Assembly (NCBI GenBank): GCA_965235115.1
Contig: OZ249438.1
Coordinates: forward strand, 26,102,001-26,166,000
Length of the DNA: 64,000 nucleotides
Reading direction: 5' to 3'
DNA from: Laetmonice hystrix
Taxonomy: Eukaryota
Each line of letters opens with the position of its first letter. The stretch's first letter is position 1. The notes beneath the pieces are model-generated. The model worked only from the letters and a program-made list of their open reading frames with translations, did no database searches and was not told the DNA's origin. A program made the translations under genes and the position numbers. Shown here in pieces: positions 46,302-55,300 of the stretch.

Positions 46302-49300
46302 ATGGCAGGCAATCCCAGCAGTTTGTTAGCTGGACTTACACAGGCTGTCGCAGAATTCAATGCGGAAGCCGTCCAAAAGGTAAAGACCATCGATTGTTAG
46401 TAGTTGTGTCTATGTCTGCTACGGTAGGCGATAGATTTTGTTTACAGGACGGGTTTAAACCGCGTAGGAGTGAACGGAAGATCAACCGTATAGCTCGGGC
46501 AATGACGTCGCTGTATTGGTATTGTTTTGGCCGGTCCAATGTCCTGATGATCGCCATTTATTTTTGGCCCCCATACTATTAGTATTAGCCTAGTATTCAC
46601 AGGCACAGATGCTGCAGGTGTGCAGCAGAAGCTAGAGATGAAGACCACGATGAAGTATTAAGGCTCTAGATGACATCATTATCATGTACTGGGGTGGTTT
46701 GCCGTCATAGATTCATAGAGAAAGTAGATCTATCTAGAGTGACTAGACAGTAAGTAACAAAACAAGGCCAAGCCCAAGGGGGGTGAGAACCCGCTCCCCC
46801 CCCCCCCCTCACATGAACTTGATGAAGAAAATAAAAAGTCTAAGAAATAAAAATGTGAGCTAATGAAAATATGTCCTACGAGACTTTGCCATACCTTTTG
46901 TAATGATGATATCCCCTCTTGTGTGGGAATTGGCCTAGTTTAGAAAAACTACTGAAAGCTGAATAATAGTAAATAACATCTTTTTTAAGGCAGCGCCAGT
47001 AGAATTGATATTTAGCCCTATTTATATATATATATTTTTTATTAATTTTGGATGGAGGGCTTTGCTTTTCATATCTGACTATCTGTAGATTAAAGCTATG
47101 CACTAGGACTTGCAAAAGAGACCTTGTTCAAGTTGTTTGTTGGCTCATGAGGGGGTGATCATTACAACCTTCATGACCCTCCCCCCCCCCCCCGCCCCAA
47201 GGGCCTGGGTACATCGCCCATGAAACCCATGAAATTTGGTCCAAAGTAAAGATCCATTGCCTTGACCTTACCCCTAACCCCCATCCCTACACCTCTTCAA
47301 AACATATCCCTATCCTAATCCCTATCCCTGACCTTAATCTGAACCCCTGCCCAAAAGTGTTGGAGGGAAGTTACCCGGGCTGGGTATGGGCTAGCAGGTG
47401 GACCTTTAAATACATAACACACCCATAATAATGGGACAAGACAAGAATACTATATTAAAGGTAATCGATCACCCTAGAGCCGCCATGTTTTGTTGGAGCG
47501 GTGACCCCATGTCCTACGACTCTGCGTATTTTAAGCTTACCTGATCTTGAATCCATCCCACTGGACTGATAAAACATTCTGTCGTAATCGTAACATTGTT
47601 GTGGTAGGTCTGTTGTTGATTATGAGCCATAATGATGCGATACATCCCATTTTTTCATCTCAATGGACTGAGAACCTAGAACACTGTAGCTCTGCGAGGC
47701 TAACGGTAATGGCGCTCGTTACTATAGCAACAGGATTGGGCCTATGCACTGTCTCGCACTGCTCTGCCTGTCCTTCCCCTATAATCCAAATAAGAGCATG
47801 ATTTGATTCGCATGCTCTCGTCTCTAGCCAAATAGGTAAACGCTTAATTAATTAATTAAAAATATTGTCGATATGGACGTGCCATGGTACCAGACTGCTA
47901 GAAACCCCTTAAAATAATTGTTTTTACTCAAGTTTTGTTGAATTGACGGCGTTTATTTCAATTTTCGGACAGATTTCCTTTAACTTTTAAAGCATCATCT
48001 TTGACATGTTTCTTAGACTTCTGCCTTACACTTTCAGGATTTTCTAGCTGCTTATGCAAGAGGTGAATTGGAGGCCGTGTTACACAATCACTGGAGCCAG
48101 TATGTTCCTGCTGTCTACTTACCTGCTGTTGAACCAGATCCAGGGAGGGAGGAACGTAAAGCACGGCGTGTGTTGTTTCGGCCACTGGAATCTTTCCTCT
48201 GTGGAGGTTCACAAGAACCAGACACAATCCTCCGGTCATTGAAAGATAAAGACCACCCACCACAGCTCTGTGGGCATGTGTTTAAAACGGGTGAGCCGAC
48301 ATACTCGTGTCGGGAGTGTGGACTTGACCCAACTTGTGTGCTGTGTGTACAGTGTTTCCAACACAGTGCCCATCGCCATCACAGATATAAGGTGAGCGGG
48401 ATTCTTTATCGGGCAAAATCATGCCCACACAGTTTTGAAACTATACCAGTCGAAATTATGGGGCGCTGGGTGCCAATTTATGGCATAACGGCCAAACACT
48501 GCTTCCGTGAAGGGATGAAATAAGCAGCCCTGGGCACAATTATTTGCTTCTGTCAATACTTTGCTCAAAACAATCCAACCTCACACTAGCCCCACAGTGA
48601 AGTCATGGCTGGTGTTTGAGGAGAGGCCGGGCATCATTGTGGCCAAGGCAAGGCATATGACACCCAGTCTGATACACAGGCTCACTGTCTACACTTGCCA
48701 TTTTTATGAATGGCTCCTAAGTCCTAACACCTTTTAACACATTAGAAATGGGTAAAATGATTTTTACATCAAAAGGAGAATGTTGAGAAGGGGTGGCCTA
48801 GTACAGGGATTTAGCTAGAGCGCGCCCACGCGCCATTGGCGCAAAATATTAACCAAATGTCCCCTTATTATTGCTTAGCTGCATCATAATGTCCCGCCTT
48901 GGAGGGCCGACCAAGAGAGAGGCATGCCAATGCTGCCACCTAGTGTGAATAAAAAAGCGCCATCTAACGTTATAGCTTTCACCTTCCCGCCCTAAAGACA
49001 GTGCTGTATGGGTTGACTCGTTTGTGAACACCAGGACTGTAGTACAGTGGTGCCCCTGTTAAAGCGACCACATTTCCACTGCATTAACCACTTCACACTA
49101 CAATTCCACCCTTAGGTCCTATAAGCGACCACCCGGCACTAACGACCAGCATATCCCTGCATCAACTCCACTGGTCACCCCTTATCAGCGACCAGCTTAG
49201 AATCAGCCGTGGCTAGTCGTCATAACACTGTTGTCTCCCCATGCCCGCCTGCCTGGCATCCTGCCGACCCAACACCCCCCCCCTCCCACCCACCCACTTC

Positions 49301-52300
49301 CATGCCACCATGGCCGGCCACGTGTCTCACCTTGCCCGCCCGACTTCCATCACACGGCCCCACCACGGCTGCTAGGCCCAGTCTCTCACCTTCCCCGCCA
49401 GGCTTCCATGACACATTAAGCTAACAGTTTTGCTCCCCCTCCTAGGCCTACTACCATGCCTGTTGAAAAAACGGTATGCTGAAAGAAGACTCTAGAAAAG
49501 CCGTAAATGAAATGAAACAGACAAGACTTAGTCTTTCTTAAAATAAAATTAAATATTTTTTGTCTCTCTGAACTGAAACTGTGTCATGTTGTCATGTGGG
49601 GGGTTATTTGGCAAGAATAACTCCATACGTGTCCCCCCTTTGCCCCCTCCCTCTAACTGGGATGTCGCCACCTAGTGTTAACTGTGTGTAGTTATCTCAC
49701 ATGTAGCCACCTGGTAGTAACCATGTGTACTTAACGACCTCCTTTAGGCGACCACCCACCACTAGCAACCACTTTCTCTCTGCAGCAGGGGTGGTCGCTT
49801 ATGAGGGGGACCACTGTAAAATATTAGGAACATGATAACAAGAACAACACATTATACAGTATTAGGCAAAACAGCAGTTGCCAGTGCTCCTCGTCAAGTG
49901 ACTCAGTTGTCCCCCAAATATTGAAAATGTCCCCTAGTTTTCTGGGCAGCGGGACATGGTGTCCCTCTTTTTCAAAATCCTGGCTTAATCCCTGCTAGTA
50001 CAAAGCTACTTTGGAGAATTGCTCCTGTAACCAGGCAGACTACTTCCATGAGACTTTGTGGAAGCTATAATTTACGGAAGATATTTTTTGCTTCCGTGGG
50101 AAAATCCTTAATTTCAACCCCTGTGATAGACATAGTAGACTTAGACTAGTAAGTGAGTGGACACTTTTAGTTTTAGTGTGCTGTAAAGTGTAACAAGACG
50201 TGCAGTCCAAAGAAATCCTGGCTGTGTGCCTGTATACTGTAATTTGTAAACTAAGTTAATAGTTGACAGGTTTTTCCTATGTACAGTAAACATTGTAGAT
50301 TGCAATGACTAATTCCACGACAAAAATGTAGGCTTCATTTGTAAAAGATGCATGATGAATTTACTCTTTTAGATGAGCACTTCAGGAGGTGGGGGCTACT
50401 GTGATTGTGGTGACGTTGAAGCATGGAAGTCAGAACCCTTCTGTGATATCCACAAACGGGGTCTAGCAAAGAAAGATCAGGGACACAAGGTGAGAATAAC
50501 TAATACTGGGTCATTGGTGTGTCTAAATCCTTATAACTTGTAGTCTGTATTGACTTGTCAACCTTGCCTCCTGTTTACAGCCAAGGCTTTGGGTAATCAA
50601 GGTTAATATATTGTACATGACTTCCCATGGACTTGTTGTCCCTGCTTACCCTGAGGCTTCTAATCTTTTACTTGTATATGAAACCAAATCCCTTCTGCTT
50701 CCTCCATTTTAAAAGGCTTGTACAAAAACATATCTGTTGCTATTATGGTGATATCGCCATACAAAATGGTAGAGCTCTAACTAAGTTGAAGTATATTGGG
50801 CAAAATAATTTCTTATTGTAAACCCACTTTCACAGCAATTTTGCAATCACTGTTTTTCTAAATTTGCCAGGTAGAGACGGAACCTGCCAGTGCAACCCAT
50901 TGATGTATCTTTTTTTCTTTACCTAATATGAGCAGGATCCTTTAAGTAAACTGTCGGTGGATATGAGGAAGAGGGCGCACGATATGTTTTTAATCACCAT
51001 CAGATATGCAGTAAACATGCTAACATGGCCCCATTCTGACCATCTACCATCAAGCCTGCAGCCTGCAAATGTCAACAACACATATGCAACCATGTTGTTC
51101 AATGATGAAGTTCACACCTATGAACAGGTTAGTGGATGGTGTGACACTGACGACACTGAGAGGCTGACCAGCAGTACACGATGATTATTATCAGTTGGAT
51201 CGAGTATAATTTGTCGTTACACTAGCAAACCCGTTAATGAATCGCATCAGTACTTACTCTTAGTGAGTCATATATGGCTAAGTGGAACAAGCAGTTCAGT
51301 TTGAATTATGAAAAAGTGATGATTTATTGCAATGTTATTTTTAGGTAATTATGTCTTTGGAACGAGCTATAGATTGCACACACAAAGATGCAGTGGACTT
51401 TGCTACAACTGTTGATAGAGAGGTGTGTAAATTAAAGATATTGTTAACATATTTTAGGCGACTGTGAATTGTAGTTTATGTAAGCCTACTCGGTAATGCC
51501 ATGTAGATAACAGTGAACCATTCTATAGACTTTCTTTGTGGACATAAAAATTCTTTCAGCTTTTCCATTTGAAAAAAAGACTTCTAGAATTCAACTTCTA
51601 CAACATTAGTCTTTTACATCAGGTATTTAAAAGAAACATTCTAGTACAGATTGTTTTTTGTTTAATTTGCCAAAGCAATATTGATTTGTGTAACATACTA
51701 GGTTATTGGTTATCTGTATGTGTAAAAGCTTGCAAACTGAGGGGTAATTATTCTTTACAATCGTTTACTTTTAGGGTCGCTGCTCAGTAAAGAATGGAAC
51801 ATTCAATGAGTGTGAAAAGGCTAGAAATTTAATGGAGGTATGTTGACTTATAAAACTATTGGCTTGCCTGCTTATGAATATTCTCTTAATAAAAAAAGAA
51901 GATCTGGAAATATGTAGTTGTATTTTAATACAAAACTTTCAAACTCTTGGTATTTGGACTGCTGTGTAAAATCTGTACTTGGGGAATAAAGCAATGCTGA
52001 ATAGTGACTTTTGACTTGTTGCAGAGAAGTACCTCCCGCCATGGTGGAAAGCCATTGAAAGTGGTAGTCATGCACACATCAGTGGTTGCACATCAGACTT
52101 TTGCACAAAAGATGTTGGCTTGGCTTCAGCACATTATGACATACTCAGGTAGGTCAAATCAAAAGTTTGTAACTGATGCATGACCAACCATGCAGTTTTT
52201 ATCTCCAAGCTCCTCTTTGAACATTCACACTGGCTTTTAAGAAAGATGAGACAAAAGTCACTGGTCTTGGTGGCTTGAAGTTGCTGTAAACTTGTGTAAC

Positions 52301-55300
52301 TTTCTGGTATAACTTAAATTCAGGAGCCTTGATTTCGTTAGTTTCCTATAAAGTGGAAATTACAGCAATGTCTTATTACTGAAGTCAATATGGTTTACAG
52401 GGTTCGTGCTTATGCCGTCCGATATACCAATTTACGCAATGAAATTGGGGGGGGGGGGGGCAAAAATGAAAAGCTGGTGCGTCCCATGTACGCATTGAAT
52501 GGACGTCATCAGTGCCACGGCTTTTTTGCTTGGCCTGGCCTGGTGGTAGCCAGGGTGGGCGGGGTTGTCCTGGGAGTCGGGCAGGACGGGTCAGGATGTC
52601 CTGGCAGTCGGGCATCATAGTTGAAAAGAATTTGTGATAGGATTACAGGGTTCGCAGACTCCTGGAAACTCCTGGAAAGTCCTGGAAAATCAAAAATCCG
52701 TTTTCCAGTACTGGAAAGTCCTGGAAAACCAGTCAGACTCCTGGAAACTCCTGGAAAAATCATAAAATGCTTTGGAACAACATAATGCTTGGGTTCAGTT
52801 TTGCTCTTTATTGCATTTAAAAATCACTGAAAAGTAATAAGTATTAGAACTTAAGTCCTGGAAAACTGCGATTTTATCCTGGAAAACTCCTGGAATTTTG
52901 GTTTCCTCTAACTCTACGAACCATGGATTAGGCAATCTCAAAAACGCTACGTTTGACAGAAACACCTGCCGAAACTGGTGACTCTAAACTAAAGTGGAAT
53001 CCTGGTTCAGTTTATTTTGGGACCCAATTTTTTCAACTGGGACCCCTTTTTTCTAAACACATGGGGTCCTGGGACCCCATTTTTCTAAACACATGGGGTC
53101 CTGGGACCCCATTTCTCAATGGCCTGGTGCCAACCCTGGTTTACTTTCCCTTGCAGATGGTCTTCGCCAGTTGTTTTGTCTACTTTCAATGACAAAGCAG
53201 GAGAATGAAGACATGTCGTTAGTTGAACGAGTGATGTTAGCGGATACTCAGCTATGGAAATGTAACTATTTTGGATGGTTTGCTTTTACAGAAGTTTTTA
53301 GTTAGGTTGGCAAATAAACAAACCTGATAATTGTGTTTACACCTGTTCTTTTTAAAAGTTTGACTTGTTGCATGCCATAAGCTTAAGTAGTTATTTAAAA
53401 GGCTTCTTGATTGGTTGAAAGTGGAGTAATCTGACTCGATGCATAGTATTTAGTAGGCCTAATAATATTTGTTTCTATGAATCTGGTATGAGGTATGAAG
53501 TTGGCACAGGTGTATGTACACATATTGACGATTTCTTGCCTATTTTTGCAGCTGCTAGGGTTCTGAGCCATCAGCTCTTCATGGCAGGGTAAGCATCAAA
53601 ATGAAAGTGATCTATAATGTGTAAATTAATATTAAGATATCAAATTTCCCTTCAGTTTAAAGAATGTAGTTCATACACTAATGCACACTAATAGTTTTAG
53701 AAATCGTTCGTATGAAATTCTAATTGATTGCAATGTTTGTTTTATGTTGTGATAGAGTTTTGATGGACCAGGAATGCAAGAAGCAGTTTGCTATCCTTTT
53801 CACAAAGGTAGGAGAGTTTGCAAAGACAGATAGTAATTTTAGGCATTTCCGATGTATTATTTATGGAGGTCAAAAGTCATCAGAGAGAAACATGTACTTG
53901 TTGATAACACAGTGAAGTTTCATGAGAATGAAGTATGTGATGTGAGAAGTAAAATATAAACATTGCAGTGATTTAAAGTTGGTAAAGCCAGTGTTATTGT
54001 ATGCAATAAGTATACTACTAACCTTTTAATTAATATAGAATCGTAAGTATTCTAGGTATTCAGCTCTAGATAAGGGCAAGAAGGCCACTGCACAAGAATC
54101 TAGAATCAATAATATTTTCTACTATCTCTGGTGAGCCGATGCTTAGTGGTAATCTTTTATGTTGGGGGCATGGCAATCAATGCTTCTTAGCATTTTAAGG
54201 TTTTCTGCAGGGCACCTGTTCAGCCAGTAGACCTCTCTTGGGATCATTATACAAAAAGAAGGCAACGTTTGGTGTGCCCCATGAGTTGAGCGAGTTCTTG
54301 CTGTAGCATCACATTAGGACTGTGGCATTGGTACCCACTGCTTTAAGGCCAACACACACACTGCGACTGCTTGCAACTTCTTGCGACGCGACCGTCGTGA
54401 CCCAGTTTTTGACCCCAGCTCATCTGCACAGGACGGAATGGAGTCTTGCGACGGTCGCAGAGGTTCTGGCATTGTCAGAACGTCTGCGACGGTCGCAGGC
54501 TGTTGCAGGCCACTCATTGCCATAGCGACGGACCGTCGTGCGACGAGTAATCGCAGTGTGTGTCTTGGCCTTTAGTCTGTGATGACCTTGTCATTCTTAA
54601 GATTTTTTTTCAGTGCACATCAACTCAATGGAGATTTATAAATAAGTCTTAATGTGTAGCTTTGGATTGGCATTGGTAGTGGCAATGTGATGTTTCCCAT
54701 CTACAGATCTATCACCGGCTCATGAGGAACTTTATAGATGATGACCATGATTACACAGTGTGTGCTGTCTCCGAGTCTGTGCAGATATACACTGTGCCCA
54801 CACTGGTAGGTTCCTTGCACGTTCTTCATTAACACAGACCAGGCAGTAACGTCGGTCCTCATTTTTATGTTTCTAGCACTACCCTGCTCTCATGACTGAC
54901 TTTATAAGGGATGACCATAGTCGGTCTGTCTCCATGACTAAGTGCTCAGTACAAATTTTCACCGTTCCATCGTTGGTAGGTCGATTTCAAGTCTTTATAT
55001 GTGAATGAAAAATTAGGAATATGGTTTGTGTTATGGTCATTGCACAGTGTAAGCGAAAGGTCGTCGGACTGTCGGACATTGATGACGAAAATCAGGAATG
55101 TCCGCCGTGTTTCATTTTAAAAACGGAGGCCAATTTGTCCTCCGTGGCTGCTGACATGCTGGCAGGGTGGCAGTAGGGAGGTTACCGGGGGGGATACCTC
55201 TGCCTGAGATTTCATATGATCTGAAGTTACCTTTTAACCTTTGTCAGCCCACGGACCTATTTTGTGATATTCTATAAGCCCCACATAGACCAGGCAAACA

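What the first reader, a model, noticed from the sequence alone, without database searches (positions are those of the whole stretch)
54707..54975. Duplicated, probably mutually exclusive 99-bp exons in UBR1/2
Two paralogous phase-0 exons encode the same conserved segment (A: [33 protein letters not shown]; B: [33 protein letters not shown]). Both have intact splice sites and no stops, and their many amino-acid differences preserve the DDH and SVQI.TVP.L core, which implies selection on both. The intron between them is only 71 nt and its likely branch As (54832 or 54849) are 27-44 nt from the donor, short enough for steric exclusion as in alpha-tropomyosin. Including both exons would stay in frame, so NMD cannot enforce exclusivity. 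A single invertebrate gene may thus produce two N-recognin isoforms, echoing the vertebrate UBR1/UBR2 split. I know of no description of this.
Basis: partly seen in the sequence, partly recalled or inferred. Interest (0 to 1): 0.75.

Follow-up and report, generated by a model that had tools for sequence, protein, structure and literature searches.

The report
Old alternative exon pair in UBR ligase
This worm-like invertebrate's only UBR1/2-type ubiquitin ligase gene has two real, interchangeable versions of one 99-base exon; the pair dates to before annelids, molluscs and brachiopods split, is already in public gene models of many species, and matches a known alternative exon pair in vertebrate UBR2.

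Summary
Exon A (54707-54805) and exon B (54877-54975) are intact 99-nt, phase-0 paralogues 71 nt apart in the genome's single UBR1/2-type gene.

They are not a local oddity. The same ordered pair, type 1 'DDHDH' then type 2 'DDH[Y/S]R', lies in six other loci I read: five molluscs and Lingula.

Equal-length annotated isoforms that differ only in this exon exist in over 15 species, including the annelid Owenia. Against the nearest locus, both window exons have dN/dS near 0.1.

No RNA of this species could be reached, so exclusivity here is inferred from orthologues.

The steric idea is partly supported:
- The 71-nt intron is the shortest of 27 in the gene.
- An annelid-like relative has 65 nt, and two more have an inferred 49 nt.
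- Molluscs and Lingula have 316-697 nt, and some of them have both-exon models.

The claim that this is undescribed is wrong in kind. Vertebrate UBR2 has a published mutually exclusive pair at the same 33-residue exon, dated to Gnathostomata.

I found no paper on the lophotrochozoan pair. It is a new member of a known kind. The scan has noted other alternative exon pairs in this genome, but not this one on other DNA.

The parts
48017..48391 (+). UBR-box exon of the UBR1/2-type gene. The gene runs on the + strand from here past the window's end, to about window coordinate 67600.
   Evidence: Pfam zf-UBR, E 1e-11. 53-79% identical to UBR1/2 N-termini. All UBR1/2-type matches in the genome lie at this one locus.
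53756..53807 (+). Constitutive exon upstream of the pair; ends ...FAILFTK in phase 0.
   Evidence: Aligns to the exon before the alternative segment in all orthologues.
54707..54805 (+). Exon A, the type-1 ('DDHD-H/Y') version of the alternative 33-residue segment.
   Evidence: The nearest relatives are type-1 exons of annelid-like genomes, Owenia and nemerteans, which share the 'VC.VSE.VQ' signature. dN/dS is about 0.10 against L007.
54806..54876 (+). 71-nt intron between A and B. Donor GTAGGT, candidate branch adenosines at 54832 (UUAAC) and 54849 (GUAAC), pyrimidine tract about 54856-54874, AG at 54875-54876.
   Evidence: Read directly from the sequence. Shortest of 27 introns in the gene; the others are about 121-1981 nt. 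Confirmed by DNA contigs, with one allelic G>A at 54821. Branch points are predicted, not mapped.
54877..54975 (+). Exon B, the type-2 ('DDH-S/Y-R') version of the same segment.
   Evidence: Groups with the type-2 exons of Owenia, Lingula, molluscs and bryozoan fragments. 25/33 identical to the L007 type-2 exon, dN/dS about 0.10. Matches residues 395-427 of human UBR1 and UBR2 in PDB 9wbw/9wbv.
56604..56687 (+). Constitutive exon downstream of the pair (ARMLISEH...).

Best explanation
**What it is**
- Exons A and B are this genome's copies of an old tandem-duplicated alternative exon pair in the single UBR1/2-type N-recognin gene.
- The pair arose before annelids, molluscs and brachiopods diverged; bryozoan fragments show the type-2 exon alone.
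- Type 1, the ancestral 'DDHDH' form, comes first and type 2, the derived 'DDH[Y/S]R' form, second.

**How it most likely works**
- Each mRNA normally carries one of the two exons. This gives two ligase isoforms that differ only in a 33-residue stretch of the conserved helical scaffold, between the ClpS-like type-2 N-degron domain and the winged-helix domain.
- In this annelid-type lineage the intervening intron has shrunk to 49-71 nt. That places the branch point of exon B within about 44 nt of exon A's donor.
- U1 on A's donor and U2 on B's branch point probably cannot assemble together, so joining A to B is blocked. This is steric exclusion, as in alpha-tropomyosin exons 2 and 3.

**Shown**
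- Paralogy of the two exons, and orthology of the pair across phyla.
- Purifying selection on both exons.
- A single gene copy in the genome.
- The intron lengths.
- Annotated either/or isoforms in orthologues.

**Inferred**
- Either/or use in this species.
- The steric mechanism.
- Any functional difference between the isoforms.
For: **Anatomy:**

**Same pair in other genomes**
- The same order, each exon 99 nt and phase 0, holds in Mercenaria, Ostrea, Mizuhopecten, Liolophura, Haliotis and Lingula.
- It also holds in the annelid-like contig L007.

**Isoforms in orthologues**
- Equal-length isoform pairs that differ only in this exon are annotated in many species:
  - bivalves: Mercenaria, Mya, Ruditapes, two Saccostrea, Ostrea, Mizuhopecten, Dreissena;
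  - chiton: Liolophura;
  - gastropods: three Haliotis, Littorina, two Patella, Gigantopelta;
  - brachiopod and annelid: Lingula and Owenia.

**Selection**
- dN/dS is about 0.10 for both exons between the window and L007, with dS saturated.
- The allelic contig of run X3 differs only in introns.

**Gene copy number:** there is a single UBR1/2 locus in the genome.

**Short intron**
- 71 nt against about 121-1981 nt for the gene's 26 other introns.
- 65 nt in L007, the shortest there as well.
- 49 nt inferred from two open frames that read through the intron into the type-2 exon.
- Hatje et al. 2017 use a donor-to-branch distance under 50 bp as the steric criterion.
- Both-included models are annotated only where the intron is long or unmeasured: Mercenaria 697 nt and Ostrea 352 nt.

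**RNA structure:** the local fold is unremarkable, z = +1.05.
Against: - No RNA of this species could be examined. The one run search returned only DNA-like runs, so either/or use here is inferred from orthologues' gene models. I could not inspect the RNA support behind those models.
- The short intron is absent in molluscs and Lingula (316-697 nt). Four of those species still have only either/or models, so another selector mechanism must exist and may also act here.
- Many invertebrates splice introns of 50-70 nt. I could not measure this genome's minimum intron size beyond this one gene.
- The branch points are predicted from motifs only.
- In L007 the other introns go down to about 80 nt, so the contrast with 65 nt is modest.
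Confidence: 0.72

Rival explanations
1. The pair is used either/or, but the choice and the exclusivity are set by something other than steric hindrance, such as tissue-specific splicing factors or long-range RNA pairing. On this view the 71-nt intron is incidental.
For: Molluscs and Lingula keep the pair with 316-697-nt introns. Mizuhopecten, Liolophura, Haliotis and Lingula have only either/or models. Introns near 80-90 nt occur in the related L007 gene.
Against: The A-B intron is the shortest in both annelid-type genes and is short in four lineages: 71 and 65 nt, plus 49 nt twice. No conserved intronic block is shared between the window and L007. There is no unusual local fold. Teleost-like UBR2 fragments show the same shortness, 63-75 nt.
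Confidence: 0.3
2. One of the two exons, most likely the more diverged exon A, is no longer used in this species and is a decaying relic.
For: Exon A departs from the type-1 consensus (Tyr in place of His after DDHD) and has the weaker pyrimidine tract. No RNA evidence exists for this species.
Against: Exon A has an open frame and an intact AG and GTAGGT. It is 79% identical to the type-1 exon of another annelid-like genome, and a relative has Phe at the same odd position. dN/dS is about 0.10, the same as exon B. The second allele carries no change in it.
Confidence: 0.08
3. Both exons are normally spliced in together, giving a protein with a tandem 66-residue repeat.
For: Double inclusion stays in frame. 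Both-included models are annotated in Mercenaria, Ostrea, Patella caerulea, Physella and Pinctada.
Against: In the same species, equal-length single-exon isoforms are also annotated. Most species have only those. In this window the intron is 71 nt, with the branch point at most 44 nt from the donor.
Confidence: 0.05

Closest known systems
Mutually exclusive 33-residue exon pair of vertebrate UBR2. Human tandem duplicated exon substitution event, age 'Gnathostomata' (PMC9741552, supplementary table). qPCR-tested Ubr2 MXE event in CHO cells (bioRxiv 10.1101/863175).
   Same: - It is the same exon of the orthologous gene, with identical boundaries (after ...F[AT]K, before ARML...), 33 residues and phase 0.
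- Both versions keep the DDH and SVQ.FT.P.L core.
- In teleost-like fragments the intron between the two exons is only 63-75 nt, inferred from read-through frames. This parallels the 71 nt seen here.
   Different: - Both vertebrate copies are 'DDH[D/E]R' forms and fall in one vertebrate clade with UBR1 and the cyclostome exons, support 97/94. Amphioxus and echinoderms show a single 'DDHDH' exon.
- The two duplications therefore look independent. The 33-column tree cannot exclude common ancestry: type 2 plus vertebrates form one side of a branch at 77/81.
- Vertebrates also have a second gene, UBR1. This genome has one gene.
Steric-hindrance mutually exclusive exons (alpha-tropomyosin exons 2/3). 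Hatje et al. 2017 found 9% of human MXE clusters with a donor-to-branch distance under 50 bp (PMC5740500).
   Same: Two adjacent homologous exons separated by an intron too short to hold U1 and U2 complexes together. Here the intron is 71 nt and the best branch candidates lie 27 or 44 nt from the donor.
   Different: The branch point is not mapped and no splicing data exist. The same exon pair works with long introns in other phyla.
Lophotrochozoan UBR2-like isoform pairs in public annotation: RefSeq X1/X2 models of molluscs and Lingula, and the Owenia fusiformis models.
   Same: These are direct orthologues of exons A and B, in the same order and with the same size and phase.
   Different: The inter-exon intron is 316-697 nt instead of 71 nt. 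I found no paper describing these isoforms.

Membership tests
Tandem-duplicated mutually exclusive exon pair (tandem duplicated exon substitution event) | Two adjacent exons that are homologous in sequence | tested here: met
   17/33 residues and 52/99 bases are identical. Each exon has orthologues in other phyla.
Tandem-duplicated mutually exclusive exon pair (tandem duplicated exon substitution event) | Same length and reading phase, with intact splice sites on both | tested here: met
   Each is 99 nt, phase 0, with AG before and GTAGGT after. The same holds in seven other loci.
Tandem-duplicated mutually exclusive exon pair (tandem duplicated exon substitution event) | mRNAs carry one exon or the other, not both | tested here: inconclusive
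   No RNA run for this species. Orthologues in over 15 species have equal-length annotated isoform pairs. Five species also have both-included models and one has a both-skipped model.
Tandem-duplicated mutually exclusive exon pair (tandem duplicated exon substitution event) | Both copies kept by purifying selection | tested here: met
   dN/dS is about 0.10 for each exon against L007. Both types are conserved across phyla.
Steric-hindrance type of mutually exclusive splicing | Upstream exon's donor lies less than about 50 nt from the downstream exon's branch point | tested here: met
   The intron is 71 nt, with motif-predicted branch adenosines 27 and 44 nt from the donor. The criterion comes from PMC5740500. 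The branch point has not been mapped experimentally.
Steric-hindrance type of mutually exclusive splicing | Short spacing conserved where exclusivity is conserved | tested here: inconclusive
   Short in annelid-type genomes: 71 and 65 nt, and an inferred 49 nt twice. Long in molluscs and Lingula, 316-697 nt.
Steric-hindrance type of mutually exclusive splicing | No A-to-B joined transcripts; lengthening the intron relieves the block | not testable with these tools
   Needs RNA of this species and a minigene experiment.
UBR1/UBR2-type N-recognin E3 ligase | UBR box, ClpS-like N-domain and UBR1-type winged-helix domain in one gene | tested here: met
   Window exons hit zf-UBR (E 1e-11), the start of ClpS (E 0.004, below Pfam's cut-off because it is only an exon fragment) and UBR1-like_wing (E 8e-16). 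The gene is colinear with Owenia UBR residues 18-1333 in the window and on to residue 1758 just beyond it.

The most novel reading that the evidence does not exclude
The same scaffold exon of the UBR1/2 N-recognin was duplicated independently twice, once in the lophotrochozoan stem and once in gnathostome UBR2. Each time it became an either/or exon. In annelids and in teleosts the intron between the copies independently shrank to about 50-75 nt, which hard-wires exclusivity. That would point to a strong, recurring advantage in having two versions of this unstudied 33-residue segment next to the type-2 N-degron domain. The alternative that my tree cannot exclude is a single bilaterian origin followed by several losses.
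Probability: 0.4. Interest if true: 0.6.

Novelty: new member of a known kind. Interest (0 to 1): 0.45.

Why it matters
- UBR1 and UBR2 are the main N-degron recognition ligases of animals. The two UBR2 isoforms made by this exon swap have never been compared functionally, as far as the held literature shows.
- An equivalent swap has been kept for over half a billion years in lophotrochozoans, probably of separate origin. This suggests the segment is a real functional switch and not splicing noise.
- The segment lies in scaffold region C, just after the ClpS-like domain.
- The conserved differences between the two versions give a concrete set of residues to test: the two positions after DDH and the next eight or so.
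- For splicing mechanics, the contrast between annelid-type genes (49-71-nt intron) and mollusc genes (316-697 nt, some with both-exon models) is a natural experiment on steric exclusion.

Tried and rejected
**RNA evidence for this species**
It returned only three DNA-like runs of one sample.
- Laying those runs confirmed the DNA but says nothing about splicing.

**cDNA fragments across the junctions**
- The profile search returned mostly genomic read-through frames.
- No fragment from this species was found.

**Conserved intronic selector or docking elements**
- blastn between the window and L007 found only the exons.
- The local RNA fold is ordinary, z = +1.05.

**Structure of the segment**
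- An AlphaFold model of a 111-residue fragment was poor (pLDDT 55), so I draw nothing from it.
- The yeast Ubr1 alignment (7mex, about residues 547-580) is weak, E 0.23.
- From memory, yeast Glu-560 aligns with the His of DDH and is a type-2-site mutant position. I could not verify this, so I do not use it.
- A remembered Johanson-Blizzard missense change at the last residue of this exon was also not found.

**Common origin with the vertebrate pair**
- The 33-column tree neither shows nor rejects it.

**Missing DNA**
- Sinanodonta: the gene is too long. P0486: the file is too large. No DNA could be fetched for either.

Full report
**1. Observation**

The window holds two stop-free 99-nt segments on the + strand, at 54707-54805 (A) and 54877-54975 (B). 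Each is preceded by AG and followed by the identical donor GTAGGT.
- They share 17 of 33 residues and 52 of 99 bases. Differences are commonest at third codon positions (13/13/21).
- The intron between them is 71 nt.
- The neighbouring exons, 53756-53807 and 56604-56687, read in phase 0 on both sides.
- Unitigs built from raw reads of two runs cover 54581-55151 with no difference, so the spacing is real.
- A third run carries an allele with one G>A at 54821, inside the 71-nt intron, and small indels at 54636-54650. Neither exon changes.
- A motif scan of 47001-64000 on both strands finds no third copy.

**2. The gene**

The exons belong to a UBR1/2-type N-recognin gene on the + strand.
- It starts at or before 48017 and runs past the window's end.
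- Window exons hit Pfam zf-UBR, the start of ClpS, and the UBR1-like winged helix.
- The gene is colinear with full-length UBR proteins.
- In the 627-Mb assembly all UBR1/2-type matches lie at this one locus, G000:C3:26150035-26169600. The only other hit is an isolated UBR box. The gene is therefore single-copy.
- Owenia (annelid) gives the best total score, narrowly ahead of nemerteans, a chiton and Lingula. Earlier notes of this scan call the genome an annelid. My data fit that but do not prove it.

**3. The pair is old and widespread**

Searches from the UBR-box exon and then from full-length relatives showed two exon types at this position across Lophotrochozoa. Type 1 has 'DDHDH' and type 2 has 'DDH[Y/S]R'. 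Window exon A is type 1 and exon B is type 2.

Genomic loci:

| Species | Locus | Inter-exon intron (nt) |
|---|---|---|
| Mercenaria | L001 | 697 |
| Ostrea | L002 | 352 |
| Mizuhopecten | L003 | 461 |
| Liolophura | L004 | 316 |
| Haliotis | L005 | 588 |
| Lingula | L006 | 402 |

In all six the order is type 1 then type 2, and each exon is 99 nt and phase 0.

Equal-length annotated isoforms that differ only in this exon exist in many species:
- bivalves: Mercenaria (X3/X4), Mya, Ruditapes, Saccostrea echinata and S. cucullata, Ostrea (X4/X5), Mizuhopecten, Dreissena;
- chiton: Liolophura;
- gastropods: Haliotis rufescens, H. cracherodii and H. asinina, Littorina, Patella vulgata and P. caerulea, Gigantopelta;
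- brachiopod: Lingula anatina;
- annelid: Owenia fusiformis.

Other patterns in the annotations:
- Both-included models exist in Mercenaria, Ostrea, Patella caerulea, Physella and Pinctada.
- A both-skipped model exists in Mya.
- A bryozoan protein and bryozoan-like fragments carry type 2.
- The nemertean models carry only type 1.
- Amphioxus (13 isoforms), three echinoderms, arthropods, a priapulid and a jellyfish show a single 'DDHDH' exon. This marks type 1 as the ancestral form.

I could not inspect the RNA support behind these public models.

**4. Both window exons are alive**
- Exon A shares the 'VC.VSE.VQ' signature with type-1 exons of Owenia, nemerteans and eight fragments from annelid-like genomes. 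It is 79% identical to the closest, and one relative has Phe where the window has the unusual Tyr.
- Exon B is 76% identical to the type-2 exon of contig L007 (ENA ERZ21788760).
- Between the window and L007, dN/dS is about 0.10 for each exon, with synonymous sites saturated.

**5. Mechanism**

*For steric exclusion*
- The 71-nt intron has branch-like motifs at 54832 (27 nt from the donor) and 54849 (44 nt from the donor, 27 nt from the AG). Both are under the 50-bp criterion used for human clusters.
- It is the shortest of the gene's 27 introns; the others are about 121-1981 nt.
- In L007 the homologous intron is 65 nt, again the shortest there, the others being about 80 nt and more.
- Two further annelid-like open frames read from the type-1 exon through the intron into the type-2 exon in a shifted frame. 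That fixes the intron at 49 nt. This is inferred, with no DNA available.
- Teleost-like UBR2 fragments read in frame through their inter-exon intron, giving 63, 66 and 75 nt.

*Against steric exclusion as the general mechanism*
- Molluscs and Lingula keep the pair with 316-697-nt introns. Some other selector must exist, and steric exclusion can only be a lineage-specific addition.
- I cannot say whether this genome splices about 70-nt introns elsewhere.

*No sign of an RNA-structure selector*
- No conserved intronic element is shared with L007.
- The local RNA fold is ordinary.

I put the either/or reading at about 0.85 and the steric step at about 0.5.

**6. What is known**

- A CHO-cell study validated by qPCR a Ubr2 mutually exclusive event whose two exons encode similar 33-residue peptides (19 conserved) and ascribed it to exon duplication.
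- Martinez-Gomez et al. list human UBR2 among tandem duplicated exon substitution events and date it to Gnathostomata.
- The vertebrate exons have the same boundaries as A and B.
- The same authors, and Copley 2004, document convergent tandem exon duplications in orthologous genes.
- In my exon tree all vertebrate exons (UBR1, UBR2 a and b, lamprey, hagfish) form one clade at 97/94, and the lophotrochozoan type-2 exons form one group at 83/0. This fits two independent duplications.
- The best tree also puts type 2 and the vertebrates on one side of a branch at 77/81. A single bilaterian origin with losses is therefore not excluded.
- I found no paper on the invertebrate pair.

**7. Where the segment sits**

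Pfam places it between the ClpS-like domain (219-296 in the chiton protein) and the winged helix (768-863).
- It matches residues 395-427 of the solved human UBR1 and UBR2 chains.
- In the yeast structure paper this interval is scaffold 'region C'. It is one of the best-conserved parts and also holds the acceptor-ubiquitin loop.
- The function of the swap is unknown in any species.

**8. Verdict**

This is a real, conserved alternative exon pair: a new member of a known kind. The novelty claim was overstated. The steric mechanism is plausible for this lineage only.

Noticed in passing
window 54337-54595 and 55114-55400: The introns beside the exon pair hold high-copy repeats. Summed contig depth is in the hundreds to tens of thousands, against about 50 for the single-copy stretch 54596-55113.
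   Followed up: no
P0025 vs P0259 (Antedon mediterranea UBR2-like X2/X1), residues 781-796: The crinoid's two equal-length isoforms differ at a different place, a 16-residue stretch at the start of the winged-helix region. This suggests a second, separate substitution-type alternative exon in that lineage. The window has no duplicate of that exon.
   Followed up: partly
P0410, P0413, P0415 (Logan fragments, teleost-like UBR2): The intron between the two vertebrate UBR2 alternative exons is open and in frame (21-25 codons, 63-75 nt). Retaining it would also keep the reading frame.
   Followed up: partly
L002 20727-20825 (Ostrea type-2 exon); P0229 (Ruditapes X2): In oysters and Ruditapes the type-2 exon has lost the otherwise invariant DDH motif (DTH and EDQ). 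The motif is therefore dispensable in that isoform.
   Followed up: no
P0411, P0414, P0427, P0438, P0442 (bryozoan-like fragments): The upstream constitutive exon reads straight into a type-2 exon with no type-1 exon between them, then into intron-like sequence. Bryozoans may have lost type 1 and the intron before type 2.
   Followed up: no
window 48017 and upstream: The open frame of the UBR-box exon has no ATG before the conserved part. The start codon is probably on a further upstream exon that I did not locate.
   Followed up: no
window 54821 and 54636-54650: Run X3's contig carries an allele with one SNP in the 71-nt intron and small indels in the upstream intron. Both exons are unchanged.
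   Followed up: partly
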